64,000 nt of DNA from IMGVR_UViG_3300033049_000066:124001-188000; one strand, 5' to 3'. Shown: positions 11,265 to 63,377, counted from the stretch's first letter. Made by a program: numbers and translations. The notes: a model not told the origin generated them from the letters alone.

Positions 11265-12086
11265 ATGATTAAAAACGTTTTTATCAGGACCCGGCCGGGC
11301 ATCGATCCGAACATCACCGACGGCCTGTTAATTGCCGTCGGTGATTGTATTCGTGAAGCTGGACTGTATATTATCACGCAGAAAGACGAAATAGATGATA
11401 GTACGCTGGTATTATCGCTAGGTGGTGATGGCACGATGATATCGTCGATTTACTTAGCATCAAATCGTGATTCTTATGTTGCTGGTTTTAACTACGGCGA
11501 TCTTGGCTATTTAGTGCCATGCACCGCGTCGTCTACTAACGATTTAATCGCGCAATTAACGGCATTAATAACCGATGTTAATTTTCCGGATTCGACTAAG
11601 TCGACATTTAAAGTAACAAAAGTTCATTTGCCGGTCCTAACCTGGAAGAAAAATCAAGCAATAAATGATTTTTATTTTACACCAGCAGCGAACGGGACAG
11701 CGGCGGATTTTAAAATTGCAATTGGATCGGTTAATGCCGCATTTCATACAAAAAGTTCCGGCATTGTACTTTCGACACCGTTTGGATCAACAGGGCTCGC
11801 GCTTTCTGCGGGTGGACCAATACTAACACCAGACAGCAATGTTTTAGAAATTGTACCATTATTACCGCATACTCTCACCTCGCGCCCGATAATATTCCCG
11901 TACACAGAGAAAGTGGTGATTACATGGGAACGTAAGATTAACATGTTTGCTGATGGTCATCTTATTGATACATTTGGAGATGGCGAGGTTGAGATCAAGT
12001 GCACCCAAGGGAAAATTAACCTCGTGCAGCCAGTCAACTGGAACTTTGTTGAGAATCTCAAAAACAAAATGCGTTGGCATTCGTAG
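11265..12086 (+). CDS. nadK: NAD kinase
   Basis: SLGGDGT, GDLGYL, IND, STPFGSTGLALSAGGPIL, PHTLTSRP. Confidence 0.92.
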   Translation: MIKNVFIRTRPGIDPNITDGLLIAVGDCIREAGLYIITQKDEIDDSTLVLSLGGDGTMISSIYLASNRDSYVAGFNYGDLGYLVPCTASSTNDLIAQLTALITDVNFPDSTKSTFKVTKVHLPVLTWKKNQAINDFYFTPAANGTAADFKIAIGSVNAAFHTKSSGIVLSTPFGSTGLALSAGGPILTPDSNVLEIVPLLPHTLTSRPIIFPYTEKVVITWERKINMFADGHLIDTFGDGEVEIKCTQGKINLVQPVNWNFVENLKNKMRWHS

Positions 12087-25919: not shown

Positions 25920-25974
25920 ATTAGTATTTATTAGAGAATTTTTTATTAATGATTACACAACCATAAATAAATAT

Positions 25975-26346: not shown

Positions 26347-26350
26347 TGCT

Positions 26351-26429: not shown

Positions 26430-26441
26430 ATTTAAAACCAG

Positions 26442-26516: not shown

Positions 26517-26631
26517 ATTTAATAACGTAGCTCAGCTGCTGAAAACAGCAATATAGATACGTATCCAAATTACTAGACATCATTTGTATTATACTGTATA
26601 ATGCATGCTTACATTAACAAAGGAAAACACA

Positions 26632-26847: not shown

Positions 26848-26854
26848 CCAGAAT

Positions 26855-26929
26855 GGGATCGTAACTCAAGCGGCAGAGCCCCGACTCTTAATCGGCGAGA
26901 TGTGATTTCAATTATCACCGGTCCCACCA
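26855..26929 (+). tRNA. tRNA-Lys(CTT)
   Basis: ctCTTaa; CCA. Confidence 0.85.
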
Positions 26930-26944
26930 AATTTAATATAATAA

Positions 26945-27020
26945 GGGTTGCTAACTCAATTGGCAGAGTACTCGGCTTTTAACCGAGAAGTTCCCGGATC
27001 GTTGCCGGGGCAACCCGCCA
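26945..27020 (+). tRNA. tRNA-Lys(TTT)
   Basis: CTCGG-ctTTTaa-CCGAG; CCA. Confidence 0.9.
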
Positions 27021-27025
27021 AATAT

Positions 27026-27186
27026 AGGTGTATGGCGGAATTAGCAGACGCTAAGTTATACGCAATCTTACTAGACGAGCCGCAATATTAAATTTGGTAC
27101 TGCCTACTGAATTTTATTATTGTGAATGGATACAAGGGCAGCAAAACATGCTCGTCGTGCAGGTGCAACTCCTGCTACACCTACCT
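27026..27186 (+). ncRNA. tRNA-Leu-like RNA with a giant variable arm
   Basis: AGGTGTA/TACACCT; Leu-type D arm; GACGAGC(27074)/GCTCGTC(27150); T arm GCAGG-TGCAACT-CCTGC. Confidence 0.6.
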
Positions 27187-27195
27187 AATTTAGAA

Positions 27196-27218
27196 TAGTG
27201 CCCCGGACCGGGGCACTA
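27196..27218. terminator. Hairpin between convergent transcription units
   Basis: TAGTGCCCCG-gac-CGGGGCACTA. Confidence 0.65.
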
Positions 27219-27220
27219 AA

Positions 27221-28333
27221 TTACTCGAACGTAATAATTATATCGTTAATGATGTAGCCGCCTGTTTTCGTGTGCTTAAAGAGCAGCGTATTATCGCCAT
27301 CCTTCCAGTACGAAGATGGAACAGTAAATGATAGTGAGACTGTCTTAGCATCATGTACTGCGCCGCCTTCAATGCCGAACAATATAATAGCTGGGTTGCC
27401 GTTAATAATTAATTCACCTTCGTCCTTAAAGTCCGGGTCGGTTACATTTAATGTAATAATACTATTTGAAGTAGTACTTGGTTTGCTAACCGCAAATGTT
27501 ATTGTAGCTTCCTCAGGAGCTGTCGCTGATAAACTAACTGGCAATACACCGCTGTTGTCGATTACAATTGTTTCATCTACCTCAAACGTTACAGCTACAT
27601 TGTAAATTTTATAACCAGCTGTCTTTGTATGTTTGAAAAGCAATGTGTTATCGCCATCCTTCCAATATGCTGCTGGTGTAGCAAACGATATATTAACTCG
27701 CTTAGCATCATGTACTGCGCCGCCTTCGGAGCCGAACAATATAATAGCTGGGTTGCCGTTAATAATTAATTCACCTTCATCGATGAAATCTGGATCGTAA
27801 ACATCAAGCACCATTATTCCACTTATGGCGTTACTTGGCTTATTGACCGCAAGCGTTATTGTAAATTCTTGCGGCGCAGTACCTTCTAAATCAGCAAGTA
27901 CACCAGGTACTGTTGGTACAGTTGGTACAGTTGGTACACCAAACGTAAATGTTGGCTTAGATGGTTTTGATGTGTTAATAGTTGATCGCTGTATTTCATT
28001 ACTATATCGAGATACTCTATTTTGAGTATCAGTCGTTGTCATCACGAAATAATAATTTGTGGAAAACGGCAAATCAAGTGTTGCGGTTACGTCAGTATTT
28101 GACGAAATCCAAACCTTATCGTTATACACACCAGAAGTAGTTCCGTAATGTATAGAGTATCCTTTTATTTCACTTAGCGGAAGTGATTCCCAGGTGCTAC
28201 AGTTGCTGGCAGACGCACCCTTAGGTGCCGCACAGGCGTCTCGCTCAGTTGGAATTTCCCATTTTAAAGTAAAGGGGGTTGCACTAACGCTAACGGACAC
28301 TAATAAGAGAAGTAGGGCTAAAAAGTTTTTCAT
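27221..28333 (-). CDS. Secreted FN3-like protein with two repeated beta-sandwich domains
   Basis: Signal VSA/; LKWEIP..IKGYSIHYG..SRYSNE; duplicated DPDF.DEGELIINGNPAIILFG...WKDGDNTLLFKHTKT. Confidence 0.75.
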   Translation of the reverse strand: MKNFLALLLLLVSVSVSATPFTLKWEIPTERDACAAPKGASASNCSTWESLPLSEIKGYSIHYGTTSGVYNDKVWISSNTDVTATLDLPFSTNYYFVMTTTDTQNRVSRYSNEIQRSTINTSKPSKPTFTFGVPTVPTVPTVPGVLADLEGTAPQEFTITLAVNKPSNAISGIMVLDVYDPDFIDEGELIINGNPAIILFGSEGGAVHDAKRVNISFATPAAYWKDGDNTLLFKHTKTAGYKIYNVAVTFEVDETIVIDNSGVLPVSLSATAPEEATITFAVSKPSTTSNSIITLNVTDPDFKDEGELIINGNPAIILFGIEGGAVHDAKTVSLSFTVPSSYWKDGDNTLLFKHTKTGGYIINDIIITFE

Positions 28334-28388
28334 TTAAATACCCCCTTAAACCATGAAAGAAGAGCGTTTATCCTTTCAAGGAGTCTTA

Positions 28389-28718
28389 TTAGCTCGCTGT
28401 AAAATTTACAGGTATGCTCGGTTCGACAGCTATAACAAATTCTAATTGCGCCCAGTCACTAGTAATACCGTTAATGTCAACTTCGCGCACACCAGCTGTC
28501 CAGTTACCAGCTTCAATTGGATTAGCCAGATCGGATATTGGTGCTACAAAAGATTGACTATTGGATATAACACCCATGATTATATTAAAATCGCTATCAG
28601 GAGCGCCAGTTGGCTTAATTGCTAAATCATAGCCTTTACGCTGTGAAGCGTCATATGTGCTTGAGTCAACGCGAGTTGTTGCGCCGTCCCAGGTAAATTC
28701 AGTTGGATTGATTATCAT
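28389..28718 (-). CDS. FN3/Ig-like small protein
   Basis: FTWD...GYDL...GNW..VREVD.NG..SDW; ATAAATA upstream. Confidence 0.6.
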   Translation of the reverse strand: MIINPTEFTWDGATTRVDSSTYDASQRKGYDLAIKPTGAPDSDFNIIMGVISNSQSFVAPISDLANPIEAGNWTAGVREVDINGITSDWAQLEFVIAVEPSIPVNFTAS

Positions 28719-28761
28719 TTTATTTTCCTATGTGATGTAACTATTTATCGTCTCTTACAAA

Positions 28762-29349
28762 TTACCAGGGAATTAATGATATTAATTTGTTAATGAAAGA
28801 TTTTTTAGTAGTCTTCATTGCTCTGTAACGTTCCCAGTCAAACAGTTTGCCGGGGTCTGTTTTACGCCTTGGTGACACATGATCGTGCCCGGCGATGTTC
28901 GCGACTGGGAATTTGTAAGTACGAAGTAATTCTTCGGTTAGTTCAATAAGTGCATCGTACTGCGCATCAGTATAGCCGCTTTCTTGGGTGGCAATCAGCT
29001 CGATGCCAAGCATCCAATTATTGCAATTGTCGTACCCGAGCCAGCGTGAACGACCAGCATGCCAGGCCTTCATCGGCAGTGGAACAAGATCGTAAACTGT
29101 ACCGTCTCGAGATATCATGTAGTGCGCAGATGCGTACATGCGATTAGGCAAATCTTTCATCTTAAACCACTTGCGATCTTTTTCCGGACGGTTTAAATCC
29201 TTAAATAATTGAATACATTTTTCAGGGTTAAATGGTTCGTCCGGAAACTGATACTTGCCACTGAAATAGTGAATTACAATGCCGTTAACTACTTTCATCT
29301 TAGATGAACTATAGCAATAATCTGGAAGCTTTTCGATAACTTTTTTCAT
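28762..29349 (-). CDS. N-acetylmuramoyl-L-alanine amidase (Amidase_2/AmpD-like), probable endolysin
   Basis: IVIHY, SAHY, AWHAG, GIEL, GHDHVSPRRKTDPG. Confidence 0.9.
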   Translation of the reverse strand: MKKVIEKLPDYCYSSSKMKVVNGIVIHYFSGKYQFPDEPFNPEKCIQLFKDLNRPEKDRKWFKMKDLPNRMYASAHYMISRDGTVYDLVPLPMKAWHAGRSRWLGYDNCNNWMLGIELIATQESGYTDAQYDALIELTEELLRTYKFPVANIAGHDHVSPRRKTDPGKLFDWERYRAMKTTKKSFINKLISLIPW

Positions 29350-29413
29350 TTTTGGACTCCTATCGAGTATTTATTAGGTTGACAAACAGGCAGGAAAATT
29401 ATATAATATATAG

Positions 29414-29887
29414 ATGATAAATCAAATTACAGGTAATTTATTTTCAGTAAAAGAAGGCTACATTATACACGGGTGCAACGCACAAGGTGTAATGGGTGCT
29501 GGGGTCGGGAGGACTATGAAATTCACATACCCGGGCGCATACAACATATATAAAAATTACATCAACAAAGCACGTGAATTAGGTGTATCCCCACTGGGAT
29601 CAAATACATATTATGCCATGAACAAATTAGTTATTATTAACGCTGTGACACAAGAATACTACGGAAATGACGGAAAGCAATACACCGATTATGATGCTGT
29701 TCGTGCTTGTTTTTATGATATAAATGCAGAAATTTTGCGATCACAAGAAATATTTGATAATATTCCCCGAGTGCTTAACTTTCCGATGATTGGATGTGGC
29801 TTTGGTGGTGGCAACTGGGAAGTTATAGAAGCTATCATAGAAAAAGAAATTAATAATAGTTTTGAAATGGTCTTATGGACTTTATAG
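29414..29887 (+). CDS. Macro-domain (Appr-1-p/ADP-ribosylglycohydrolase-like) protein
   Basis: GNLF..IIHGCNAQGVMGAGV..PMIGCGFGGGNW. Confidence 0.9.
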   Translation: MINQITGNLFSVKEGYIIHGCNAQGVMGAGVGRTMKFTYPGAYNIYKNYINKARELGVSPLGSNTYYAMNKLVIINAVTQEYYGNDGKQYTDYDAVRACFYDINAEILRSQEIFDNIPRVLNFPMIGCGFGGGNWEVIEAIIEKEINNSFEMVLWTL

Positions 29888-29898
29888 ATACTGAATAA

Positions 29899-29985
29899 CC
29901 CTCGGTGATGAAATTGGTAAACATAGAAGATTTAAAATCTTCCGCCTGAACAGGCTTGCGGGTTCAACTCCCGCCTGAGGGACCA
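29899..29985 (+). tRNA. tRNA-Leu(TAA)
   Basis: GAAGA-ttTAAaa-TCTTC; CCA. Confidence 0.9.
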
Positions 29986-29991
29986 AACAAT

Positions 29992-30088
29992 CCAAAGATT
30001 ACGCCGATTCTCCGCGGAACGGTGAATGGATGCCTCGCTTAGGCGCAGGCTGTGAATAACGTTGGTTTGACTCCAACTCTTTGGGCCA
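29992..30088 (+). ncRNA. tRNA-like RNA with acceptor, T arm and CCA but aberrant D and anticodon arms
   Basis: CCAAAGA/TCTTTGG-GCCA; GTTGG-TTTGACT-CCAAC. Confidence 0.55.
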
Positions 30089-30127
30089 ATTTAAAAGTGT
30101 ACTTAGGGGTGGTTGAATGTGCAAAGG

Positions 30128-30201
30128 GGCGACTTTAGCTTAATGGTAAAGCCCTCGGTTGTGATCCGAAAAGATGCGAGTTCGAATCTTCGTAGGTCGC
30201 C
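30128..30201 (+). tRNA. tRNA-His(GTG) inside a 34-bp flanking stem
   Basis: G-1:C73; ttGTGat; no CCA. Confidence 0.85.
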
Positions 30202-30262
30202 CCTTTGCGCATTCAACCACCCCTAAGTACATTTACGTTACAACACATGATAAATACTTACT

Positions 30263-30484
30263 ATGAAAGCAAATGAAATTATGCACGAAAGAACTAGTAA
30301 CCGCATTAAGGTACAAATGCACGAATACGGACCTATTGGTAATCGAAAATATTCATTAGTGGATATGCGAACTCGTAAGACACGAGCTACATCGTTCAAC
30401 GGACAGTTTGAGGCGAAAGCATACGCAAACAAAAGGAATTGGTTTATTAGCCCCGTTAATATAATCGAACCCGTTTCCAATTAA
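30263..30484 (+). CDS. Small putative internal virion protein
   Basis: MKANEIMHE; ATAAATA upstream. Confidence 0.6.
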   Translation: MKANEIMHERTSNRIKVQMHEYGPIGNRKYSLVDMRTRKTRATSFNGQFEAKAYANKRNWFISPVNIIEPVSN

Positions 30485-30574
30485 TCAAGTTAACCTAAAT
30501 ACTAGACATTAGTCCTAAACGATAGTATAATTGTACAAAGAATCATATACAATTTAACACTAACCAGGACCTCT

Positions 30575-31735
30575 ATGAAAACAAAATTCATGATCGGCGG
30601 TGATACCGTACACGTATTCAATATGAACGAAGAACTAGCGTTGGATAAACTCCCGCCACGGATCTACACCGTCCGGTTTGACCCACTACAGGGCTTTCAT
30701 CTTGGCATCACAAAAGATAAGCTTGACTTGCCTAGTAAGATTTACGGTGAGACTCCAATGCGTGTACAAAAGTGTATAGATACATATACCGATCGTACTG
30801 CATCTACCGGCATTTTATTAACCGGTGATAAAGGTACAGGCAAAACATTATTGATGTCGTTGCTTGCAAATGAAATAATTAGCAAATTAAAATTGCCAGT
30901 AATACTCATTAAAGAGGCATACGAAGGTGGTGCGTTTACAAACTTCATTGAATCCATTGGCGAATGCGCTCTTGTGTTTGACGAATTCGGGAAAATGTAT
31001 TGTCCAAATTCGAGACGCAACGAGAATGATATACCTCAAACCTCATTATTATCATTAATGGATGGGGTTGACAAAACCAAGCGTATGTTTATTTTGACTG
31101 AAAACAGCGAGCTGGACATCAACGACTTCATGCTAAATCGTCCGAGTCGCATCTACTATCACTTCAAGTACAACAAGCTTGACGAAGGCAGCGTCATCGG
31201 CTACTGCGAGGATTATAAGGTCGGCACCGAGGAGATAAGAGATATCGTAGATCTTGCTCGGCGCTCACAGGTTTTTAGCTTCGATATGCTCCAGACTATC
31301 GTCGAGGAGCACCAGCGTTACGGTACGTCAATAGGCGAGGTTGCGGAAGATTTAAATATCGACACGCGCGAAGAACAGGGCGATATGATTGAGGTGCTAA
31401 AAATACTCGAGCGTGGCACGAAAAATGAGCGTGAGATCTATGGCACGCCGTACGTCACAAAACCTAACAGTAGCTACACGTACATCAACATCAAGGATAA
31501 TAAAATTGAAAGTTCTGAGGTTGAGATGCCAACTGCAACGGCAGTGGATAGCACTGATAGCAGCGAAGATAGCCCTGTATGCGCAAGCGAGGAAAATAAC
31601 TATCGCTCCGAGTACGTCGAGGCGAAGAACTTAGCTTACGAAAAAGATGGGCAGCTGGTTTACGAAACAGAAAAATTCACCTTCATCGCAAAAGATATGC
31701 CCAAGCTTCAAACAAATTATTTGAAATTTTTCTAG
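30575..31735 (+). CDS. AAA+ ATPase
   Basis: GDKGTGKT, LVFDEFGK, LLSLMDG, NRPSR. Confidence 0.9.
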   Translation: MKTKFMIGGDTVHVFNMNEELALDKLPPRIYTVRFDPLQGFHLGITKDKLDLPSKIYGETPMRVQKCIDTYTDRTASTGILLTGDKGTGKTLLMSLLANEIISKLKLPVILIKEAYEGGAFTNFIESIGECALVFDEFGKMYCPNSRRNENDIPQTSLLSLMDGVDKTKRMFILTENSELDINDFMLNRPSRIYYHFKYNKLDEGSVIGYCEDYKVGTEEIRDIVDLARRSQVFSFDMLQTIVEEHQRYGTSIGEVAEDLNIDTREEQGDMIEVLKILERGTKNEREIYGTPYVTKPNSSYTYINIKDNKIESSEVEMPTATAVDSTDSSEDSPVCASEENNYRSEYVEAKNLAYEKDGQLVYETEKFTFIAKDMPKLQTNYLKFF

Positions 31736-31744
31736 GTAAACGAA

Positions 31745-32137
31745 ATGCGCACTAAATTATTAATTCTTGTAACTTTAACAGCACCACTATTTTTAATTGA
31801 CTGGTCGGCCAAGGAGAAGAGTTCCGGTGGTGAGGTCGACGCACTTTACTGGCACGGAGGGAGTCGCTACACCGTGAAGGACGACAATGGGGGCCTGATC
31901 ACAAGCAGAACGATACCGCCCTGGGGTAGTCCACACAACGGCAATGTCATTGTGTACAGTGATCTTGCTCCGGGAGAAAAAACTTGGTATCTCTGTGAGT
32001 GGGATTGGAGTTGGATGTACGGCACGATGGGTGGGGATGCGAATTGTGAAATTCACATTCACGGACTAGATGATATCATCCCCGGTAATTGGGATCATGG
32101 CAAATTTGGCAGAGGGTCAATCACACGCATAGAATAA
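31745..32137 (+). CDS. Membrane-anchored hypothetical protein
   Basis: Hydrophobic N-terminus; WDHGKFGRG. Confidence 0.65.
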   Translation: MRTKLLILVTLTAPLFLIDWSAKEKSSGGEVDALYWHGGSRYTVKDDNGGLITSRTIPPWGSPHNGNVIVYSDLAPGEKTWYLCEWDWSWMYGTMGGDANCEIHIHGLDDIIPGNWDHGKFGRGSITRIE

Positions 32138-32157
32138 AATATCGCCAAAAAGAATAC

Positions 32158-32233
32158 AGTGACATAGCTCAATTGGCAGAGCACGAAGCTCATAACTTCG
32201 AAGACGCAGGATCGTTGCCTGCTGTCACTACCA
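32158..32233 (+). tRNA. tRNA-Met(CAT)
   Basis: AGTGACA/TGTCACT; ctCATaa; CCA. Confidence 0.88.
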
Positions 32234-32270
32234 GACACTGAACAAATAGCAGTTAACTGCAGGAGGTAAC

Positions 32271-32747
32271 ATGTTCACCGTAGATGAAAAAACAGAAATA
32301 GTACAGTACTTAAAAGATATGCCCGCGAATTCCTCAGTGTATATCGGTTCTGACTCCGTGAAATACAAACGCAAGGGGTTATGGTACGCTCGGTACAACG
32401 TAGCATTCATTGTCCACATTGCATCAAAGCACGGTGGTAAGATTTTTCACACTACATCTGTCGAACGTGATTACGATCCTAAGAAGGAAAAGCCTCGTAT
32501 GCGACTAATGACCGAAGTATACAAAGCCGTAGGTGTTTACATGGAATTCGCGGAGGTACTTGAAGATTTACCTGTCGAAATCCACATCGATGTTAATTCA
32601 GATGAGAAGCACAACTCCAGCATCGTGCTGCGAGAAGCACTTGGCTACATCAAAGGAATGACCGGACTAGATGGAGTGCCTAAGCCAGATGCCTGGGCCG
32701 CATCGACGGTTAGTGATTACGGTGCCAGAGGGAAATTTACACACTAA
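32271..32747 (+). CDS. RNase H-like YkuK-family protein
   Basis: VYIGSDS, RLMTEV, EIHIDVN, KPDAWAAS..SD. Confidence 0.85.
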   Translation: MFTVDEKTEIVQYLKDMPANSSVYIGSDSVKYKRKGLWYARYNVAFIVHIASKHGGKIFHTTSVERDYDPKKEKPRMRLMTEVYKAVGVYMEFAEVLEDLPVEIHIDVNSDEKHNSSIVLREALGYIKGMTGLDGVPKPDAWAASTVSDYGARGKFTH

Positions 32748-32776
32748 GGATTCAATCGCGCAAGGATGCGCATTTT

Positions 32777-32852
32777 GCCGTCGTAGCTCAGTTGGTAGAG
32801 CGCAGACCTGGTACGTCTGAGGTCATCGGTTCAACCCCGATCGTCGGCTCCA
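32777..32852 (+). tRNA. tRNA-Thr(GGT)
   Basis: CAGAC-ctGGTac-GTCTG; CCA. Confidence 0.9.
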
Positions 32853-32892
32853 ATTTTAGATGCATTATAATGCTCGTATGATAAATACCGTT

Positions 32893-33876
32893 ATGCCAAG
32901 ACATAAAAAAATCGCGCAAAGACATGCGAAAATTCTTAATATACAGAATCCCGCAACAGGGAAATTTGAGTTAGATAAAATTAAAACAAAATACGATAGA
33001 ATCCTTAAATACTCATTTGCGGAAATATATATTATAGACGCTGGAACTATGAAGTTCACCGAAGTCAGCGCAAACGCACTGCGGAACCTCGGCTACACGC
33101 TGGCGGAGATGCAGAAGATGAAGGCTGGTGACGTCGCACCTCAGCTTTCTGCCGGGCAATGTAACAAGATTTTTGTTGCGTTGAACAGTGGGGAAAATGA
33201 GGTCGCGAAGATGAAAACAGTTATTTTGCGCAAAGATGGATCAGAGTACAAAGTTAATCTTCGCGTACAGTACGCGAGTGGTGAAGACCCAGTGTACATC
33301 ATAATGGCGTCGGACATCACAGAACGTGACAGGTACGAAGCTGAGTTAAAAGCCCTTGCCTTCCGAGACCCCGGCACAGATTTGTACAATAGACGGTACT
33401 TCTTAGAACACCTTAGGGGAACGATAAACCATGCTAACAGAATGCACTCTCCTATTGGATTAATTTTAATCGACATGGATGATTTTAGTAAGGTCAATAA
33501 CAATTACGGACACATCGCTGGTGACAAGGTAATCTCAGATTTTGCAAATAAGATATGCGATGTATTTTCAAGGAAGACAGACGTCGTAGCAAGATACGGT
33601 GGGGATGAATTTGTAGTGCTGTGTATCGACAATTCCGCTGAAACATTAATCGCAAAATGTAACCAGCTTATAGCTCGACTAAACAAAGCATTGTACTACG
33701 ACGGTCACACAATTGTCCAAACCGCAAGCATAGGCATTTGCCACTACAACGCGAATGCTATAACAATCTCAACTGAGGATCTTATTAACGGTGCTGACAT
33801 TGCTATGTACAAGGCCAAGGCAGCTGGTAAAAATCAAGTCAAAATATGTAACAACGACGACCTCAATGAGGATTAA
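32893..33876 (+). CDS. PAS-GGDEF diguanylate cyclase
   Basis: PAS (..RKDGS..DITE), NRRYF, IDMDDF..VNN.YGH.AGD, RKTD I-site, RYGGDEF; start placed after ATAAATA. Confidence 0.92.
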   Translation: MPRHKKIAQRHAKILNIQNPATGKFELDKIKTKYDRILKYSFAEIYIIDAGTMKFTEVSANALRNLGYTLAEMQKMKAGDVAPQLSAGQCNKIFVALNSGENEVAKMKTVILRKDGSEYKVNLRVQYASGEDPVYIIMASDITERDRYEAELKALAFRDPGTDLYNRRYFLEHLRGTINHANRMHSPIGLILIDMDDFSKVNNNYGHIAGDKVISDFANKICDVFSRKTDVVARYGGDEFVVLCIDNSAETLIAKCNQLIARLNKALYYDGHTIVQTASIGICHYNANAITISTEDLINGADIAMYKAKAAGKNQVKICNNDDLNED

Positions 33877-33894
33877 TGGCAATAATATTTAGGA

Positions 33895-34205
33895 ATTACT
33901 ATTTGAAGCTAAAGTAGGTTATCACGGACAAGGGTGCAAATCCCTTCATTTCCACCAAAAGCATCTTTTTACAAGGGTTCTTTTGGGGGATGATTTCAGA
34001 TTCGACGTGGGACTGAGGATAAGTGGATAGTACGGCAACGCAGAAGTCGTGACACTTGAAGAAGCAAACTTAAAATAATCGCAAACGATTCATTTTACAC
34101 TGAGGAATTAATGGCTGCGTAAAGCGCCACCCTCTGAGGTTGAAACAGCCTTATAACCAGCTTGTTAGTCGTGCCCTATTGACGAATGAACACAATGTAG
34201 GGGAC
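33895..34205 (+). ncRNA. ssrA: Circularly permuted (two-piece) tmRNA; tag ANDSFYTEELMAA*; outer boundaries approximate
   Basis: T arm + CATTTCC-ACCA (ends 33957) lies upstream of GGGGATG...GATTCGAC (33986); tag at 34081-34122. Confidence 0.88.
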
Positions 34206-34216
34206 GCGATACTTTT

Positions 34217-34290
34217 GACTCTATAGCATAATGGCAGTGCGAGGGATTGCAAATCCTTAGATCCCGATTCGACTTCGGGTAGAGTCTCCA
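34217..34290 (+). tRNA. tRNA-Cys(GCA)
   Basis: GACTCTA/TAGAGTC; ttGCAaa; U73-CCA. Confidence 0.9.
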
Positions 34291-34309: not shown

Positions 34310-35128
34310 ATGAAATATGTTATCTTTTTTACACTACTATTACTCGCGGCGCCAGCACAAGCATGGGTTGTTAACGCAAATTTTGAAAACGGCAATATAG
34401 GGAGCAAAGCCAAAGGATCCGATGGATTCAATAGTTCATTTTCAAATACAAAATACACGAATGCGGTAGTACATAGTGGAAGACAGGCTGCTGTCACCTC
34501 AATAAAACAAGGTGAATACGGATTTGGTAAATGGGGTGGCTTAATAAGATTACCGGCGACCCTTGGTGAGGGTAAGCAAGTATGGTTTCGTGCGTGGATT
34601 TATTACCCGGCCGGATTTAGTTTTACTAACAATGGCATTGGGGTAAAAACATTACGGTTACATACAAAATCATCTACTGGAAGCAATGATGGCTACTTCG
34701 ATGTGCTAACTAATAAAAATGGACTCACTGTTGGGATCGAGCAAACGAGCAAAATATTTATAAAAAATAACCCAAATTGGAGAGATGTGAGCTCCGGAAT
34801 TTCAACTGGTGTATGGTATGCCTACGAAATGTATGTAAAACTTTCGTCAGTGCCAGGCAAGGGAATATACAGAGTTTGGCTAAATGGAAAGTTATTACTT
34901 AATGATACAAAAACACCGACTCTGAAATCAGCAGGGTCCAAGGCAGACTTTATATATATTTGGTCTTATTTCAATGGTAGTTCACCTAAGGATCAAAAAG
35001 CGTACGTTGACGACATTATTATTACCAATGAAGTCCCGGGCGGCCGCGATGCACAAGGAAATAGATTTATTGGTATTGGTACTCAAACATGGACTGCTAG
35101 ACCAAAACCCCCAACACCTAACGAATAA
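34310..35128 (+). CDS. Secreted polysaccharide-lyase-like beta-sandwich protein
   Basis: Signal AQA/W; paralog of 25062-25919. Confidence 0.7.
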   Translation: MKYVIFFTLLLLAAPAQAWVVNANFENGNIGSKAKGSDGFNSSFSNTKYTNAVVHSGRQAAVTSIKQGEYGFGKWGGLIRLPATLGEGKQVWFRAWIYYPAGFSFTNNGIGVKTLRLHTKSSTGSNDGYFDVLTNKNGLTVGIEQTSKIFIKNNPNWRDVSSGISTGVWYAYEMYVKLSSVPGKGIYRVWLNGKLLLNDTKTPTLKSAGSKADFIYIWSYFNGSSPKDQKAYVDDIIITNEVPGGRDAQGNRFIGIGTQTWTARPKPPTPNE

Positions 35129-46368: not shown

Positions 46369-46428
46369 AGGTTGACAGTATAGGTAAATACTGTTATAAT
46401 AAGTACATAAACATCAATTAGGGAGCCT

Positions 46429-47508
46429 ATGCAGATGATGAAAAAACAATACGATTTAGTCGTTTATATCGGCAGATTTCAACCAAGACACAACGGCCAC
46501 CGCGAAACAGAGCGGATAGCGTCGACATTAGCAGATAATGTGCTAATACTAATCGGGTCCGCAAATGGGCCTCGCACTACACGAAACCCCTGGACATACA
46601 AAGAACGTGCTGCTGAAATCCGCGAGGATTCCGAAGTCATGAATCTCATGATCGACGGATTAGATGATTACACGTACAATAATAACAAGTGGGTACAGCA
46701 AGTTGGTGAGAAAGTTCAACGTGCGATCGACAAGGTTATTGAAATTGATTTATACACTTCTTCACCGGATTCGCTCAGCAAAGGTGACACCGTTAACGTC
46801 GCAATTGTAGGGCATGATAAAGATCACACTAGTGATTATCTAAACAATTTCCCCCAGTGGGATTACATCGAAGTTCCAGCATATCCTTCAAGCACTGATA
46901 GAATTGATTCCACTAAAATTAGACAGCTAATGTTCAGTGGACAATTGTCATTTATTGACGGGGTGGTTCCGGGCAGTCAAGTCCGTGATTTTACAAAGTC
47001 CAAGGAATTTGCAGGATTACTTGACGAATGGAACTACATCGCAGAATATAAAAAAGCTGCTAGCGCCGCACCGTACGAAACGATCTACACAACCGTAGAC
47101 GCTGTCGTTGAACAAAGTGGGCACGTTCTGCTCGTTCAACGAGGCAGTTTCCCCGGCAAAGGCTTGTGGGCAATGCCCGGTGGATTTATTAATCCCAAGG
47201 AAAGAATTGTAGATGGCATTATTCGTGAACTACGTGAAGAAACAAAACTTAAAGTACCCGAGAAAGTACTGCGAGGATCAATCACGCACCGAGACGTTTT
47301 TGACGATGTCGAGCGTTCGACACGTGGGCGCACAATTACTCACACTGCGTTAATCCAATTAGATAATGCATCCTCATTACCAAAAGTGAAAGGAAGTGAC
47401 GATGCGATGAATGCCAAGTGGTTCTCACTTGCAGAGTTTGAAACAATGAAAAATATCATGTTCGAAGATCACTATTCGATTATAAAAAATATGCTGAGTA
47501 GAGCATAA
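46429..47508 (+). CDS. nadM: Bifunctional NMN adenylyltransferase / Nudix ADP-ribose pyrophosphatase (NadM-Nudix)
   Basis: YIGRFQPRHNGH, RNPW, STKIR; Nudix PGG..RELREET; RGRTIT; GSDDA. Confidence 0.92.
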   Translation: MQMMKKQYDLVVYIGRFQPRHNGHRETERIASTLADNVLILIGSANGPRTTRNPWTYKERAAEIREDSEVMNLMIDGLDDYTYNNNKWVQQVGEKVQRAIDKVIEIDLYTSSPDSLSKGDTVNVAIVGHDKDHTSDYLNNFPQWDYIEVPAYPSSTDRIDSTKIRQLMFSGQLSFIDGVVPGSQVRDFTKSKEFAGLLDEWNYIAEYKKAASAAPYETIYTTVDAVVEQSGHVLLVQRGSFPGKGLWAMPGGFINPKERIVDGIIRELREETKLKVPEKVLRGSITHRDVFDDVERSTRGRTITHTALIQLDNASSLPKVKGSDDAMNAKWFSLAEFETMKNIMFEDHYSIIKNMLSRA

Positions 47509-47538
47509 ACTATTGCGCGGAGTGCGCAGGAGAAAAGT

Positions 47539-47853
47539 ATGAAAATTATAGCAACCACAACCGAGAAGAACTTTTTAGTAGAAGCTACTGAATCTGAACT
47601 TATGACATTAGTTGGTCTCTCAAATACTAATAATGCACGGTCACAAGATTTTAAACATAGTCGGTTACGAGTTAATGGCGAAATTGATGTTAGTAAATTC
47701 GCCAAGACCGCATCTTATGTTCGGAGGATGGATGAGCAGAATTTACAAAGAATTAAGGAGTTTCTAACGGGCGCCATCGATAATATCGATGAGGCTACTG
47801 ACACTGTAAACAAAATAAACTTATTTGACATGTTAGGTGATGAAGATGAATAG
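47539..47853 (+). CDS. Hypothetical protein
   Basis: AGGAG RBS. Confidence 0.65.
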   Translation: MKIIATTTEKNFLVEATESELMTLVGLSNTNNARSQDFKHSRLRVNGEIDVSKFAKTASYVRRMDEQNLQRIKEFLTGAIDNIDEATDTVNKINLFDMLGDEDE

Positions 47854-48769
47854 CCTACTACTCGCTCACTGGTACGCACCAGAGGCGGTGAAAGAAATGG
47901 CCGACTACGTTGGTGACAGTCTCGGACTGATACAAGAAGCGCAAAGGATCAACCCTGAGAGGCTAGTATTTGCTGGGGTGAAGTTCATGGGAGAAACAGC
48001 GAAGGTTATGCTCCCTGATACTACTGTCGTTATGCCGGATATCAACGCAACGTGTTCTCTTGTTACGCAAACTAACATAGAGGATTTATATGCCTGGGAT
48101 TCCGCAAATCGAGAGACCGCTAAGAAAAATGGGCGGGACGTTACTCACATTATGTACATAAACAGTTCTGTTGATATGAAGGCAGTTGCTGACATTATTG
48201 TTACATCAGCAAATGTAAATGCGGTGGTTGAGGATGAGATCGCCAAGGGCAATAAAGTCATTTTTAGCCCTGACAAAAACATGGGCAAATACATCAACCA
48301 AGAATTTAATTATGATATGACCGTGTTCTCGTCAGTTTGCGAAGTTCACGACGCATTTAACATTAACCAGCTTAACGAAGATATGGGTGGGTGGACGGAT
48401 GGTAGCAAATTCTTAGTGGCACATCCTGAGAGTCCAATTGAGGTATTAAACAAAGCTGATTTTGTAGGCAGTACTAACAAAATGCTACAGTGGATTATTG
48501 ATTTCCCGTACAAGGTAGGCACGATTTGGGTAGCGACTGAAGCCGGACTCTTGTTTGATATGAAAAAGGCGCGGCCCGGGCTTGACATTAGGCCGGTATC
48601 CGCGTATAATGGATGTATGTGCAATGAATGTCCTTATATGAAATTAAACACCATAGACGCGGTACAGCAAGCAATAAATGGTGCCAGCGGTACTGTTATT
48701 GATTATTTAACAGATGAGCAATTGGAAGCGGCACGTAAACCAATTGAACGTATGTTAATTCTTAACTAA
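47846..48769 (+). CDS. nadA: Quinolinate synthase
   Basis: LAHWY, GDSL, GVKFMGET, TCSL, YINSS, TSAN, CEVH, AHPE, GST, TE, ECPYMK. Confidence 0.93.
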   Translation: MNSLLLAHWYAPEAVKEMADYVGDSLGLIQEAQRINPERLVFAGVKFMGETAKVMLPDTTVVMPDINATCSLVTQTNIEDLYAWDSANRETAKKNGRDVTHIMYINSSVDMKAVADIIVTSANVNAVVEDEIAKGNKVIFSPDKNMGKYINQEFNYDMTVFSSVCEVHDAFNINQLNEDMGGWTDGSKFLVAHPESPIEVLNKADFVGSTNKMLQWIIDFPYKVGTIWVATEAGLLFDMKKARPGLDIRPVSAYNGCMCNECPYMKLNTIDAVQQAINGASGTVIDYLTDEQLEAARKPIERMLILN

Positions 48770-48786
48770 AATAGAGGAGCTCTATT

Positions 48787-50253
48787 ATGAACAAAATACA
48801 AAACATGTTCGCACCACAAGCGAACGACATAGCATACACAGAAGATAAGAAATTAAACATTAGCTTGATATGCAGAATTGACAGCTATAAATTTTCGCAT
48901 CCGTTTGCCTATCCGAACGATATAAACATTGATGGGATGACCTCATACGGTGAGACCCGCGTGTCACCAAAAGATACAATCGTTCCATTTGGTATGCAAA
49001 TGCTTCTTAAGCGTTATCTTACTCAGACAATTACAATGGCTGACATTGACGCGGCTGAGGATTTTAGCACCGCACATTTCGGCAGGACACTGTTTGATCG
49101 CAGTGCGTGGGAAAAAGTTGTCCGTGAATACGCTGGCAAGCTCCCGCTGATAATCAGAGCGGTTCCGGAAGGAACAGTCATGAATGGTAGCCAGCCCATC
49201 TACTCAGTTACAGTGCTAGACAGAGATTTGTTCTGGATGAGTGCCGGCTTTGAAACGCTCATCCAACGCGCGATTTGGTACCCGACGACGATTGCCACGA
49301 TGGATTACATCGTGCGCAATGAGATGGAAGCGTTCTACGATAAGACAGGGGCTGACAAATCTTTGCTCCCGTTCGCCCTGCATGATTTTGGAGGACGTGG
49401 GGTGAGCAGTGCGGAAACCGCCGAGATTGGTGGCGCCGCGCATCTTGTTAATTTTCTAGGCAGTGACACGGTCGAGGGCGTTCTTGCTGCGAATTTCTAC
49501 TACAAGGAAGAAATGAGCGGGTTCAGCGTGTACGCTACGGAGCATGCCATACAGTGTTCCTTCGGTAGCGGGACAGATGACGCGCTACGCTATCTTAGAC
49601 GACAGCTACGCAATGCCCCGCCGGGTTCCGTCGTAAGCATTGTTATTGACGGTTACGACGTGTATCGTGAAGCAAATCTACTATGCACCGTGATGAAGGA
49701 TGAGATTATCGCCAGCAAGGCAAAGGTCGTGTTCCGGCCGGACAGTGGGGACATGATGGAAATTATCCCTCGCTTGCTATTGATGCAATCAGAAGCATTC
49801 GGTACTACAAAAACTGCCGAGGGCTACTTACAAATAAATTATGTCGGGCTCATCCAAGGGGATGGAATTGACAGAGCGATTATTAGCGAGGTCTTGGATT
49901 TAGTTACGTTCTTGGGCTTTGCGGCTGATACGGTGATGTTCGGCAGTGGAGGCGCTTTGCTACAAAAAGTGAATCGTGACACGCTGAAATTCGCACAGAA
50001 GGCCTGCGCTATTCTCGTGGATGGTGAGTGGGTTGGTATCGCAAAAGACCCAATTACCGATCACGGTAAGAAGTCCAAGGAAGGGGTATTGACTCTCGCA
50101 AGAAATATCGAGAGTGGTGAGCTAACGACGGCGCGGTTAGACCAGGGGTCGTTGCCGGCGGGGATGGAAGACGCGATGAAGCTCGTGTACTTCAAAGGGG
50201 ATTTGTTCAATGAAATTACATTCGCAGAGGTCAGAAAAAATGTTATCAAGTAA
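48787..50253 (+). CDS. nadV: Nicotinamide phosphoribosyltransferase (Nampt)
   Basis: DSYKFSH, LHDFGGRG, GSDT, ATEH, RPDSGD, QGDG, FGSGGALLQ..NRDT, KDPITD..KKSK. Confidence 0.95.
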   Translation: MNKIQNMFAPQANDIAYTEDKKLNISLICRIDSYKFSHPFAYPNDINIDGMTSYGETRVSPKDTIVPFGMQMLLKRYLTQTITMADIDAAEDFSTAHFGRTLFDRSAWEKVVREYAGKLPLIIRAVPEGTVMNGSQPIYSVTVLDRDLFWMSAGFETLIQRAIWYPTTIATMDYIVRNEMEAFYDKTGADKSLLPFALHDFGGRGVSSAETAEIGGAAHLVNFLGSDTVEGVLAANFYYKEEMSGFSVYATEHAIQCSFGSGTDDALRYLRRQLRNAPPGSVVSIVIDGYDVYREANLLCTVMKDEIIASKAKVVFRPDSGDMMEIIPRLLLMQSEAFGTTKTAEGYLQINYVGLIQGDGIDRAIISEVLDLVTFLGFAADTVMFGSGGALLQKVNRDTLKFAQKACAILVDGEWVGIAKDPITDHGKKSKEGVLTLARNIESGELTTARLDQGSLPAGMEDAMKLVYFKGDLFNEITFAEVRKNVIK

Positions 50254-50450: not shown

Positions 50451-50927
50451 ATGACAAAATATGACTTTTCAAATGTCTACGAGGATGAGGATGGCTGGTA
50501 TCGCTTTCACATCACCGACCTCAGTGGCACGGAATTTAAAAGTCAAGAATTCTTCACAAGCGCTGACGCACTTAAAGATTTAAAATATGTGCAGGGGTCT
50601 ATCCAAGCTACTGACGAATTTTTGCTAAATTTAAATGATGGATTCTGCCCTATATGTGGGCGAGCAAATGACGGTACTATGTCTGCGCATCATTTAGTTC
50701 CTAAATGTAAGAAGGGCAAGGACACTGTTAGCATCCATCGTGTCTGTCATGATGCGATTCATGCTACCTTCACCGACAAGGAACTTTCTCGAGATTTCAA
50801 CACGGTGGAGAAGCTGCTTGGGGATGCGCGAATACAGAAATTTGTGAGATGGGTAGAGAAGAAAGCTGCGAATTTCACAAATCCTAGCATTATGAGCAAT
50901 AAGAAGAACCCAAATAAACATAAATAA
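50451..50927 (+). CDS. HNH-family protein
   Basis: CPICGR..HHLVPK...HRVCHDAIH. Confidence 0.8.
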   Translation: MTKYDFSNVYEDEDGWYRFHITDLSGTEFKSQEFFTSADALKDLKYVQGSIQATDEFLLNLNDGFCPICGRANDGTMSAHHLVPKCKKGKDTVSIHRVCHDAIHATFTDKELSRDFNTVEKLLGDARIQKFVRWVEKKAANFTNPSIMSNKKNPNKHK

Positions 50928-62294: not shown

Positions 62295-63377
62295 ATGAAA
62301 GATTTATATACGAACTTATTAGCATTATCCGACAATGATGATACTCCATTTTATCATTCAGATCAAGTGCTATCAAATAATGAATTCTATCGAATTTTCA
62401 GTTATCATTTTACTGATCGTGAATCTTGGCTGCTACCGAGTGCGTTGGAATCTCGCGGAATTATGTTCGAAACTACTGCAGATGGTGAGTTCATTCGCAT
62501 CGCGTCACGCCCAATGCACAAGTTTTTCAATCACAATAGTCGGACTTTGCAAGGCGAGGTTGATTTCATCAACTACGGTACGCCAGCTTACGTCATGCAC
62601 AAGGCGGATGGTTCGCTGATTAGCTCGTACTTAAACGCTAATGGGGAGATTTTATTAAAGTCCAAGACTAGCATCGGGTCGGACTATGCGCAGCTCGCGT
62701 TGAAACTTTTGTTTGCTGACACGGCGATGTACGATTTTGTGAAGTGGTGTGAGGCGGATGGCTACACGGTGAATATGGAGTTGGTGTCGCCGGATCCGAA
62801 ATTTCGAATTGTGCTACACTACCCGGAACCGCGGCTGATTGTGCTAAATGTGCGACAGCGTGAGAGTGGTGGGTACATGGATCCAAGGAGCATCCCTAAG
62901 GAATTTTTCACAGGGTCGGCTGACGTCGGCGCTTTGCTCGAGCTTGACACGGTTACGAATTTGGAAGGCTACGTTGTGCTGGATGACAAGGGCAACTGGT
63001 GGAAGGAAAAAGCGGACTGGTACCTCGAGCGGCATCGTGCTAAGGATTTTGTAAACCAGCCTCTCGCTTTCGTCCAGCTGGTGTTGAAGGATGAGGCGGA
63101 TGATATTTTTACGTTGCTCGCGGATCAACCAGAGGTCTTGGCGGAGATGCAGGCGTTACAGCACAGTGTCATTACGGTCGCGAATGGGTATGTAAACACG
63201 GTGACAAAGTACTGGCAGGAAAACAAAGATTTATCACGCAAGGATTACGCAATCAAAGGTAAGGAAAATTTAGACTGGATGGAGTTCATGCTTGCGATGA
63301 AGTACTACTCAGGCACTGAGCCCGACTGGAATGAGTGCCTGCTAAAACAACTTAAGAAAATTAACTGGGATATTTAA
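62295..63377 (+). CDS. T4 Rnl1-like RNA ligase
   Basis: ESRGIMF, SRPMHKFFN, motif I KADGSLI, NMEL, EGYV. Confidence 0.9.
   Translation: MKDLYTNLLALSDNDDTPFYHSDQVLSNNEFYRIFSYHFTDRESWLLPSALESRGIMFETTADGEFIRIASRPMHKFFNHNSRTLQGEVDFINYGTPAYVMHKADGSLISSYLNANGEILLKSKTSIGSDYAQLALKLLFADTAMYDFVKWCEADGYTVNMELVSPDPKFRIVLHYPEPRLIVLNVRQRESGGYMDPRSIPKEFFTGSADVGALLELDTVTNLEGYVVLDDKGNWWKEKADWYLERHRAKDFVNQPLAFVQLVLKDEADDIFTLLADQPEVLAEMQALQHSVITVANGYVNTVTKYWQENKDLSRKDYAIKGKENLDWMEFMLAMKYYSGTEPDWNECLLKQLKKINWDI

What the first reader, a model, noticed from the sequence alone, without database searches (positions are those of the whole stretch)
46429..50253. NAD reconstitution operon extended with de novo enzyme NadA
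Seen: NadM-Nudix, NadA and NadV in one operon, plus NadK (11265) and a macro domain (29414) elsewhere. Known: Nampt + NMNAT form a phage NAD-reconstitution route that counters NAD-depleting defences. Quinolinate synthase, with its three Fe-S Cys motifs intact, belongs to de novo synthesis and is not part of that route. NadB and NadC are not in this window.
Basis: partly seen in the sequence, partly recalled or inferred. Interest (0 to 1): 0.6.

Follow-up and report, generated by a model that had tools for sequence, protein, structure and literature searches.

The report
Phage NAD salvage genes plus quinolinate synthase
A large uncultured marine phage carries, inside its NAD-recycling gene set, an intact-looking copy of quinolinate synthase, the iron-sulfur enzyme that builds the pyridine ring of NAD. 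It lacks the enzymes before and after that step, so the phage probably boosts one fragile host step to keep NAD supplied.

Summary
A perfect sigma-70 consensus promoter lies upstream, and a second is embedded in the 3' end of nadA.

NadA looks functional:
- It keeps the three cluster cysteines and all catalytic residues of Thermotoga NadA.
- It folds as NadA (pLDDT 93, TM 0.83-0.87).
- It is under purifying selection.

The window is part of a 293-kb seawater jumbo-phage record. That record has no NadB, NadC, NadE or aspartate dehydrogenase. Neither do three relatives that are 91-100% complete.

NadA is not a one-off. More than 100 metagenomic NadA clusters form phage clades, and in at least 11 different phage contigs NadA lies within 6 kb of NadM-Nudix and NadV. 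One relative lacks NadA at the same position, so it is an accessory add-on. No verified GenBank phage has it, and no paper in the library describes it.

The nearest cellular NadAs (about 50% identity) are the housekeeping enzymes of Chromobacterium, Chitinimonas and related betaproteobacteria. There nadA often sits directly upstream of nadM.

Most likely the phage supplies the bottleneck enzyme of host de novo synthesis, adding new pyridine rings to an NARP2-type recycling route. The phage also encodes IscU and two IscA-type carriers. Function is inferred, not shown.

The parts
46372..46400 (+). Promoter P1: perfect sigma-70 consensus (TTGACA, 17-nt spacer with TG, TATAAT) upstream of nadM-nudix.
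   Evidence: 12 of 12 matches; 18 perfect consensus promoters in the 293-kb genome, all on the + strand, against 0.4 expected.
46429..47508 (+). nadM-nudix: bifunctional NMN adenylyltransferase and ADP-ribose pyrophosphatase (the NMNAT half of an NARP2-type pair).
   Evidence: CTP_transf_like plus NUDIX; PRK05379 family 362 bits, under the 397-bit equivalog cut-off. HNGH motif at residue 21 and a near-canonical Nudix box. The true start is possibly ATG 46435 or 46438.
47539..47853 (+). 104-aa ORF of unknown function; its end overlaps the nadA start.
   Evidence: No family match. Conserved only in near relatives: 38-41% identity in L001, 31% in L010. Absent from more distant NadA loci. No atlas lead.
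47837..48769 (+). nadA: quinolinate synthase, a [4Fe-4S] enzyme. Cluster ligands C73, C168 and C265; catalytic H11, Y13, N109, S124, H171, H196 and E198.
   Evidence: PF02445 246 bits. Alignment to T. maritima NadA at E 1e-38. The catalytic residues and C168/C265 are invariant and C73 is nearly invariant across 27 phage-clade sequences. AlphaFold2 pLDDT 93.2. Foldseek TM 0.83-0.87 to holo NadA structures. dN/dS 0.07-0.21 where it could be computed.
48582..48610 (+). Promoter P2: perfect sigma-70 consensus embedded in the nadA codons for L-D-I...Y-N, 177 nt upstream of nadV.
   Evidence: The same embedded motif lies at the homologous nadA position in L001 (8719) and L005 (8713); the hexamers are kept while the Arg codon in the spacer differs synonymously.
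48787..50253 (+). nadV: nicotinamide phosphoribosyltransferase (Nampt).
   Evidence: NAMPT_N plus NAPRTase; NF006629 463 bits, over its cut-off. E 9e-110 to PDB 7yqo. The motifs that I recall as carrying human Nampt's phospho-His, Asp219 and PRPP-binding residues (HDFG, GSDT, RPDSGD, GDG, NRDT) are kept.
50451..50927 (+). HNH-like 158-aa ORF downstream of nadV (context only, probably not part of the pathway).
   Evidence: Weak HNH match at 17.7 bits. Conserved downstream of nadV in L001 (59%), L005 and L010.
11265..12086 (+). nadK: NAD kinase, 35 kb upstream (NAD to NADP).
   Evidence: NAD_kinase_C 66 bits. GGDG motif. Also present in relatives G001 and G005, where in G005 it lies next to nadA.
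29414..29887 (+). Macro-domain protein (predicted to process ADP-ribose derivatives), with its own perfect consensus promoter at 29379.
   Evidence: Macro 22.8 bits against a cut-off of 22. Promoter.

Best explanation
The cluster is an early, host-RNA-polymerase-transcribed NAD(P) supply module of a marine jumbo phage.

NadV and NadM-Nudix form the known NARP2-type recycling route. Nicotinamide plus PRPP gives NMN, and NMN plus ATP gives NAD. The Nudix half would turn ADP-ribose into AMP and ribose-5-phosphate.

NadA adds an input of newly made pyridine rings. It condenses host-made iminoaspartate (from host NadB) with DHAP to give quinolinate. Host NadC, then NadD or phage NadM, then host NadE convert quinolinate to NAD. 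Phage NadK makes NADP from it.

Why only NadA? I infer that it is the weak link of the aspartate route. Its [4Fe-4S] cluster is oxygen-labile, the enzyme is slow, and its substrate decays within minutes. A phage that shuts off host transcription cannot rely on the host to renew it. The logic resembles cyanophage psbA. The phage's own IscU and two IscA-type carriers would help load the cluster.

Shown here: gene identities, intact active site and fold, purifying selection, conserved linkage to NadM and NadV, consensus promoters, and absence of NadB, NadC, NadE and NadX.

Inferred: enzyme activity, dependence on the host enzymes, the reason only NadA is carried, and any benefit against NAD-depleting defences.
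For: - NadA identity and integrity.
- Purifying selection: dN/dS 0.07-0.21, with synonymous sites saturated in the other pairs.
- Linkage: NadA lies within 6 kb of NadM-Nudix and NadV in the window and in L001/L009, L005/L020, L010, L011, L003/L015, L007, L008, L019, L014 and L017, despite rearranged gene order. G004 carries NadV elsewhere in its genome.
- Missing pathway steps: NadB, NadC, NadE and Asp_DH are absent in G000 and in the 91-100% complete relatives G001, G004 and G005.
- The subfamily is a true quinolinate synthase: it is the only NadA in the Chitinimonas, Jeongeupia, Chitinibacter and Chromobacterium genomes.
- Promoters.
- Fe-S assembly: IscU (171 bits) and two A-type carriers in the own genome; A-type carriers in all three near-complete relatives.
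- NARP2 is a proven counter-defence: as summarised in PMC13464706.
Against: - The host is unknown, so the presence of host NadB, NadC and NadE is assumed.
- There is no RNA or protein evidence.
- NadA scores below the NCBIfam equivalog cut-offs (274 against 294; 230 against 263), so it is a divergent subfamily.
- A relative with 68%-identical NadV lacks NadA, so it is dispensable.
- nadA-nadM linkage also exists in bacteria, so part of the phage linkage could be inherited rather than selected.
- De novo flux through a slow enzyme may be too small to matter against a fast NADase.
- The phage Fe-S assembly genes may serve other clients. The window has an HhH-GPD glycosylase with a Cys cluster, and relatives carry up to 13 radical-SAM matches, 9 of them over the family cut-off.
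Confidence: 0.55

Rival explanations
1. The phage handles quinolinate itself. The product of NadA would be taken by the phage NadV (a type II phosphoribosyltransferase related to NadC) or by an unrecognised phage enzyme, then adenylylated by NadM. The route would then need less from the host.
For: nadV directly follows nadA with a 17-nt gap. NadV accompanies NadA in every sufficiently complete genome examined. NadC, PncB and Nampt share a fold (established knowledge).
Against: NadV keeps the motifs that, by my recollection of human Nampt, carry the nicotinamide-specific Asp219 and the other catalytic residues. It is about 40% identical to the NadV of many phages that have no NadA. Nothing in the sequence suggests a dicarboxylate pocket. 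NaAD would still need host NadE, which the phages lack.
Confidence: 0.1
2. NadA is kept for something other than NAD supply. Examples: quinolinate as an end product, the reported triose-phosphate-isomerase side activity, or a role as an Fe-S or redox sensor.
For: The two neighbouring pathway steps are absent from the phage genomes. An extra CxCxxC cysteine pattern (C260, C262, C265) is invariant in the phage clade.
Against: NadA's consistent neighbours are NAD enzymes: NadM, NadV, NadK and NADAR. The full catalytic set for quinolinate formation is invariant. The same subfamily is the sole housekeeping NadA in several bacteria.
Confidence: 0.12
3. NadA is neutral baggage. It came into phages as part of a bacterial nadA-nadM(-nadV) block and has no role of its own.
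For: 26 of 79 bacterial sister loci have nadA directly followed by a full-length nadM-nudix. A Sulfurirhabdus MAG has nadA-nadM-nadV. Phages L014 and L017 show that same order. A relative lacks NadA.
Against: Strong purifying selection with saturated synonymous sites. More than 100 diverged clusters fall in phage clades. NadA stays linked through several different gene orders. A promoter for nadV is maintained inside its coding sequence.
Confidence: 0.1
4. The stretch is bacterial DNA, either a misassembly or a mis-called virus, so NadA is simply a host gene.
For: The GenBank 'phage' records with NadA are of this kind.
Against: - The record is a single 293-kb contig with 25 tRNAs, many small ORFs on one strand, RNA ligases, Pnkp and an HNH gene.
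- Close relative G001 is 344 kb with direct terminal repeats and is rated 100% complete.
- It shares gene order with the window around the locus.
- No NadB, NadC or NadE is present.
Confidence: 0.02

Closest known systems
NARP2 (phage Nampt plus NMNAT; example Vibrio phage KVP40 NadV/NatV)
   Same: The same two enzymes, adjacent in a phage genome: Nampt, and an NMN adenylyltransferase fused to a Nudix ADP-ribose pyrophosphatase. NARP2 is described as restoring NAD after depletion by defence systems (PMC13464706).
   Different: NARP2 as described has no de novo enzyme. Here a quinolinate synthase is inserted between the two genes and is conserved there across many uncultured jumbo phages. 2018 GenBank phage records match NadV, but none of the 9 NadA matches is a verified phage.
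Bacterial nadA-nadM(-nadV) clusters in Chitinimonas, Jeongeupia and related betaproteobacteria, and in a Sulfurirhabdus MAG
   Same: The same NadA subfamily (about 50% identity) and the same NadM-Nudix type (39-43% identity) as direct neighbours. Sulfurirhabdus has all three genes in the order seen in phages L014 and L017.
   Different: In the four genomes checked (Chitinimonas, Jeongeupia, Chitinibacter, Chromobacterium) this NadA is the only housekeeping copy, and all also have NadD. NadB and NadC were not searched for in them. The phages carry NadA alone of the de novo route. The direction of transfer is unresolved.
Complete aspartate de novo pathway (NadB-NadA-NadC)
   Same: NadA is a typical member by sequence, residues and fold.
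   Different: NadB, NadC, NadE and aspartate dehydrogenase are absent from the phage genomes. The pathway is therefore not phage-autonomous.
NARP1 (Adps plus Namat) and NARP3 (PnuC plus NadR-like)
   Same: The same overall aim: keeping NAD available in the infected cell (PMC13464706).
   Different: No Prs-type domain was found in the own genome, and no PnuC in any of the six genomes. The chemistry differs too: ring synthesis rather than ADP-ribose recycling or riboside import.
Phage genes that replace a fast-decaying host enzyme (cyanophage psbA)
   Same: The proposed logic: the phage carries only the most fragile step of a host pathway. This is an analogy from established knowledge, not a test.
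   Different: A different pathway, and no turnover data exist for NadA in infected cells.

Membership tests
Quinolinate synthase NadA (PF02445 / TIGR00550) | Sequence match to the family model above its curated threshold | tested here: met
   Pfam PF02445 246 bits against a cut-off of 27. The stricter NCBIfam equivalog cut-offs are narrowly missed: NF006878 274 against 294, TIGR00550 230.5 against 262.9.
Quinolinate synthase NadA (PF02445 / TIGR00550) | Three cysteine ligands of the [4Fe-4S] cluster, one from each domain | tested here: met
   C73, C168 and C265 align with T. maritima C81, C168 and C254. C168 and C265 are invariant and C73 is nearly invariant in 27 phage-clade sequences.
Quinolinate synthase NadA (PF02445 / TIGR00550) | Catalytic residues (T. 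maritima H19, Y21, D35/S36, Y107, N109, S124, H171, H193, E195, and the GST motif) | tested here: met
   All are conserved in the pairwise alignment. H11, Y13, D27, S28, Y107, N109, S124, H171, H196, E198 and T213 are invariant in alignment A2. The residue roles are recalled from the structural literature.
Quinolinate synthase NadA (PF02445 / TIGR00550) | Three-domain alpha/beta fold with pseudo-threefold symmetry | tested here: met
   AlphaFold2 pLDDT 93.2, pTM 0.89. The Foldseek top 17 hits are NadA structures with TM 0.82-0.87.
Quinolinate synthase NadA (PF02445 / TIGR00550) | Catalyses iminoaspartate plus DHAP to quinolinate | not testable with these tools
   Needs complementation or an enzyme assay.
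Complete de novo aspartate pathway | NadB (or aspartate dehydrogenase) and NadC encoded alongside NadA | tested here: not met
   PF00890, PF01958 and PF01729 are absent in G000 and in G001, G002, G004 and G005; PF00890 and PF01729 are also absent in G003. The control genomes were positive.
NARP2 (phage Nampt plus NMNAT) | Nampt homologue with catalytic motifs | tested here: met
   NF006629 463 bits, over its cut-off. Motifs kept in the alignment with PDB 7yqo.
NARP2 (phage Nampt plus NMNAT) | NMN adenylyltransferase (here fused to Nudix) encoded next to Nampt in a phage | tested here: met
   Both genes lie within 3.8 kb on one strand.
NARP2 (phage Nampt plus NMNAT) | Restores NAD and rescues phage from NAD-depleting defence systems | not testable with these tools
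   Needs an infection assay.
NARP1 / NARP3 | Prs-like Adps plus Namat (NARP1); PnuC transporter plus NadR-like enzyme (NARP3) | tested here: not met
   No Pribosyltran_N domain in the own genome. No NMN_transporter in six NadA-bearing phage genomes. Namat and NadR were not searched for separately.

The most novel reading that the evidence does not exclude
Phage-driven de novo pyridine synthesis could be a fourth way of restoring NAD. The phage would supply only the oxygen-labile bottleneck enzyme NadA, helped by its own IscU and IscA cluster-assembly proteins. That would make NAD restoration independent of recovering the nicotinamide released by NADase defences. It would also raise the total NAD(P) pool rather than only recycling it.
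Probability: 0.35. Interest if true: 0.7.

Novelty: new variant of a known kind. Interest (0 to 1): 0.58.

Why it matters
The known phage answers to NAD-depleting immunity (NARP1, NARP2, NARP3) recycle breakdown products or import a precursor. None makes new pyridine rings.

A conserved, intact quinolinate synthase inside the NARP2-type module of many uncultured jumbo phages suggests that some phages also push the host's de novo route, and do so by supplying a single enzyme. If true, three things follow:
- It marks NadA as the controlling or most fragile step of NAD synthesis in infected cells.
- It gives a reason for phage-borne Fe-S assembly genes.
- It offers a simple, testable addition for studies of defence and counter-defence in laboratory strains.

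It also shows that cultured phage collections miss this trait entirely.

Tried and rejected
- **IMG/VR scan with the single protein.** It found nothing. An alignment-based scan found 11 loci.
- **ENA/JGI loci as genome handles.** They are not held, so IMG/VR records were used instead.
- **The 104-aa ORF as a universal NadA partner.** Rejected. It is conserved only in near relatives and absent at more distant NadA loci, and the atlas gave no usable lead. No complex prediction was run because I make no binding claim.
- **NadM replacing NadD in bacteria with nadA-nadM operons.** This would have tied NadM to the de novo route. Rejected: all five genomes have NadD.
- **Altered substrate choice of NadV.** No sign of it.
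- **GenBank 'phage' NadA hits.** The best annotated one is bacterial chromosome, flanked by argJ, ogt and tRNAs. The others are UNVERIFIED records.
- **Direction of transfer between phages and betaproteobacteria.** Unresolved. The tree backbone has low support and the outgroups sit on very long branches. I ran no AU test.
- **dN/dS.** Most pairs are saturated at synonymous sites.
- **A specific NAD consumer or PRPP source in the own genome.** No NAD-dependent ligase and no Prs were found.
- **Expression.** Only three DNA runs from one seawater study hold the stretch. Read laying was not run, because laying the source sample's own contigs would add nothing.
- **The large representative search (search of protein representatives).** Not used, because the word search settled the question.
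Full report
**What is there**

The window is bases 124001-188000 of a single 293,278-bp virus record (41.6% G+C, rated 83% complete). The DNA is held by three runs from one seawater metagenome study, and no RNA run holds it.

On the + strand, 46429-50253 holds four tightly packed ORFs:
- nadM-nudix, 46429-47508
- a 104-aa ORF, 47539-47853
- nadA, 47837-48769
- nadV, 48787-50253

Family scans:
- NadM-Nudix matches CTP_transf_like plus NUDIX, and the PRK05379 bifunctional family at 362 bits (under that model's 397-bit cut-off).
- NadA matches PF02445 at 246 bits. It narrowly misses the NCBIfam equivalog cut-offs (274 against 294).
- NadV matches NAMPT_N plus NAPRTase, and NF006629 at 463 bits, over its cut-off.
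- The 104-aa ORF matches nothing.
- NadK (11265-12086) is confirmed. The macro domain (29414-29887) is just at threshold.

**Is NadA intact?**

- Aligned with T. maritima NadA (E 1e-38), it keeps the three cluster ligands (C73, C168, C265). It also keeps H11, Y13, the GDSL motif, Y107, N109, S124, H171, H196, E198 and the GST motif.
- These residues are invariant or nearly so in 27 related sequences that average 63% column identity.
- The AlphaFold2 model has pLDDT 93.2, and its best structural matches are holo NadA structures at TM 0.83-0.87.
- Between phage copies, synonymous sites are mostly saturated while non-synonymous differences stay at 0.13-0.24 per site. Where computable, dN/dS is 0.07-0.21.
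- NadV keeps the Nampt motifs (HDFG, GSDT, RPDSGD, GDG, NRDT). NadM keeps HNGH and a near-canonical Nudix box, and NadK keeps GGDG.

**Transcription signals**

The genome holds 18 perfect TTGACA-N16-18-TATAAT sites, all on the + strand, against 0.4 expected. One lies 29 nt before the nadM ORF (46372). One lies before the macro gene (29379). One lies inside the 3' end of nadA (48582), 177 nt before nadV.

That embedded site is built from the codons for L-D-I and Y-N. It recurs at the same place in two relatives, while the Arg codon in its spacer changes synonymously. No convincing terminator separates the genes.

I infer early transcription by the host sigma-70 polymerase: one promoter for nadM, the small ORF, nadA and possibly nadV, plus a second promoter for nadV alone. 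Such a consensus also argues for a proteobacterial-type host rather than Bacteroidota. That last step rests on my knowledge of promoter types, not on a test.

**The rest of the pathway is missing**

- NadC (PF01729) and NadB (PF00890) give no hit even at E 1 in the own record.
- The same holds in five related virus records. These include G001 (344 kb, direct terminal repeats, 100% complete), G004 (91%) and G005 (100%).
- NAD synthetase and aspartate dehydrogenase are also absent.
- The control genomes rang in every search.

NadA therefore stands alone as a rule in these phages, not because the contig is incomplete.

**How widespread is it?**

- The word search returned more than 100 clusters at 51-75% identity, many on contigs of 170-363 kb.
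- In the window and at least ten further distinct phage contigs, NadA lies within 6 kb of NadM-Nudix and NadV. The gene orders differ: M-x-A-V, A-M-V, A-K-...-M-...-V.
- G004 carries NadV elsewhere in its genome. The three records with no NadV found are only 20-55% complete.
- A relative whose NadV is 68% identical has NadM, five small ORFs and NadV, with no NadA in its 139 kb (52% complete). NadA is thus an accessory add-on to the module.
- Among 50,697 GenBank phage records, 2018 match NadV but only 9 match NadA, all at 32% identity or less. The annotated one is bacterial chromosome, and the others fetched are unverified records.
- No close cultured relative of the phage was found.

**Cellular relatives**

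The nearest cellular NadAs (49-52% identity) belong to Chromobacterium, Chitinimonas, Neisseriaceae and related betaproteobacteria, and to some Gammaproteobacteria.

In Chitinimonas, Jeongeupia, Chitinibacter and Chromobacterium this is the only NadA in the genome, so the subfamily is a working quinolinate synthase there. In 26 of 79 bacterial loci, nadA is directly followed by a full-length nadM-nudix that is 39-43% identical to the phage gene.

A Sulfurirhabdus MAG carries nadA-nadM-nadV as a second NadA locus, in ordinary chromosomal surroundings. All five bacterial genomes checked have NadD, so NadM does not replace it.

Trees place the window in a well-supported phage clade. Phage-context sequences fall into about four clades. 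Their branching relative to the single bacterial clade is not resolved, so the direction of transfer is open.

**Supporting context**

- The own genome encodes IscU (171 bits) about 1.1 kb beyond the window's 3' end, between Pnkp and an Rnl2-type RNA ligase.
- It also encodes two A-type Fe-S carriers with their cysteine motifs (genome 69960-70313 and 74977-75348).
- A-type carriers occur in all three near-complete relatives, and IscU also occurs in G005.
- These proteins could serve NadA, but not only NadA. The window has an HhH-GPD glycosylase with a Cys cluster. Relatives carry up to 13 radical-SAM matches (9 over the family cut-off), while the own record has only one sub-threshold hit.
- PnuC, a Prs-type domain and NAD-dependent ligase were not found.

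**Interpretation**

The best reading is an NAD(P) supply module:
- NadV and NadM-Nudix recycle nicotinamide and ADP-ribose, as in NARP2.
- NadK makes NADP.
- NadA adds newly built pyridine rings, using host NadB upstream and host NadC and NadE downstream.

The reason for carrying only NadA is inferred from what is known of the enzyme. It needs NadB and holds one [4Fe-4S] cluster (PMC9981529). From memory, it is the oxygen-sensitive step of the pathway, it is slow, and it uses an unstable substrate.

The rivals are less supported: phage-side use of quinolinate, a role outside NAD supply, neutral baggage, and bacterial contamination. Each is set out in its own section.

**Novelty**

The two broad surveys of viral NAD and ADP-ribose systems do not mention quinolinate or NadA. 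The 2026 NARP3 paper lists only NARP1, NARP2 and NARP3. Eight searches of the paper library found nothing on a phage-borne NadA.

I rate it a new variant of a known kind. It matters to the NAD counter-defence field and is easy to test. Function remains unproven.

Noticed in passing
window 18923-34290: 25 tRNA genes on the + strand, covering 19 of the 20 amino acids. No Ile anticodon was called, and there are two Met-CAT genes. Several minus-strand ORFs in my rough gene list for this stretch are probably spurious.
   Followed up: partly
whole genome; window 1413, 15803, 17883, 17971, 29379, 36606, 37972, 41503, 46372, 48582: 18 perfect sigma-70 consensus promoters, all on the + strand (0.4 expected). 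One near-identical promoter cassette (TTGACATCTTGGGCTA...) recurs at four genome sites (61019, 161972, 195294, 253350), with a variant at window 52941.
   Followed up: partly
window 18250-18420 and 18614: A 92-bp unit repeated in tandem (1.9 copies, 100% identical). Its promoter-like core recurs at 18614. Each copy carries a promoter-like site whose -10 region lies in an inverted repeat, just upstream of the tRNA array.
   Followed up: no
genome 189082-189477 (about 1.1 kb past the window end); genome 69960-70313 (+) and 74977-75348 (-): The phage encodes IscU (NifU_N 171 bits, three Cys present) and two A-type Fe-S carriers. A-type carriers also occur in relatives G001, G004 and G005, and IscU in G005.
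   Followed up: yes
window 32860-33876: A phage-encoded GGDEF diguanylate cyclase (141 bits) with a weak PAS domain. This suggests the phage manipulates host c-di-GMP signalling.
   Followed up: no
window 13192-14190, 62295-63377; L104 1220-2095 and 2692-3642: An RNA repair set: an RlaP-like nucleotidyltransferase and a T4 Rnl1-type ligase in the window, with Pnkp and an Rnl2-type ligase just beyond its end.
   Followed up: no
window 581-1408: An HhH-GPD DNA glycosylase with a C-x5-C-x2-C-x5-C motif near its C-terminus. It is probably an Fe-S protein.
   Followed up: partly
window 34310-35128 and 27221-28333 (-): Weak matches to polysaccharide lyase and to a CBM-like domain, possibly capsule-degrading proteins. 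The minus-strand ORF overlaps the tRNA region and may not be real.
   Followed up: no
L022, L068 and 24 other bacterial loci; L044 5953-9506: Chitinimonas, Jeongeupia and related betaproteobacteria have a nadA-nadM(nudix) gene pair. A Sulfurirhabdus MAG has nadA-nadM-nadV as a second NadA locus beside a canonical NadA elsewhere in its genome.
   Followed up: partly
L003 5859-7043, L007 6768-7943: An adenylosuccinate-synthase-like gene (PurA or PurZ type) lies next to or near nadA in two more distant jumbo phages. L003 also has NADAR and NadK flanking nadA.
   Followed up: no
L020 (JALVEJ010000141.1, 3.2 kb): A contig binned in a Flavobacteriales MAG carries a NadA identical to that of phage contig L005, followed by a NadV gene and a third ORF that match the window's genes as L005's do. 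It is probably a mis-binned phage fragment, or a weak hint to the host.
   Followed up: no
L100 (CAKLQH020000046.1): The GenBank record 'Acinetobacter phage MD-2021a' contig is ordinary bacterial chromosome (zitB, sugE, ogt, argJ, nadA, tRNAs). The database label is misleading.
   Followed up: yes
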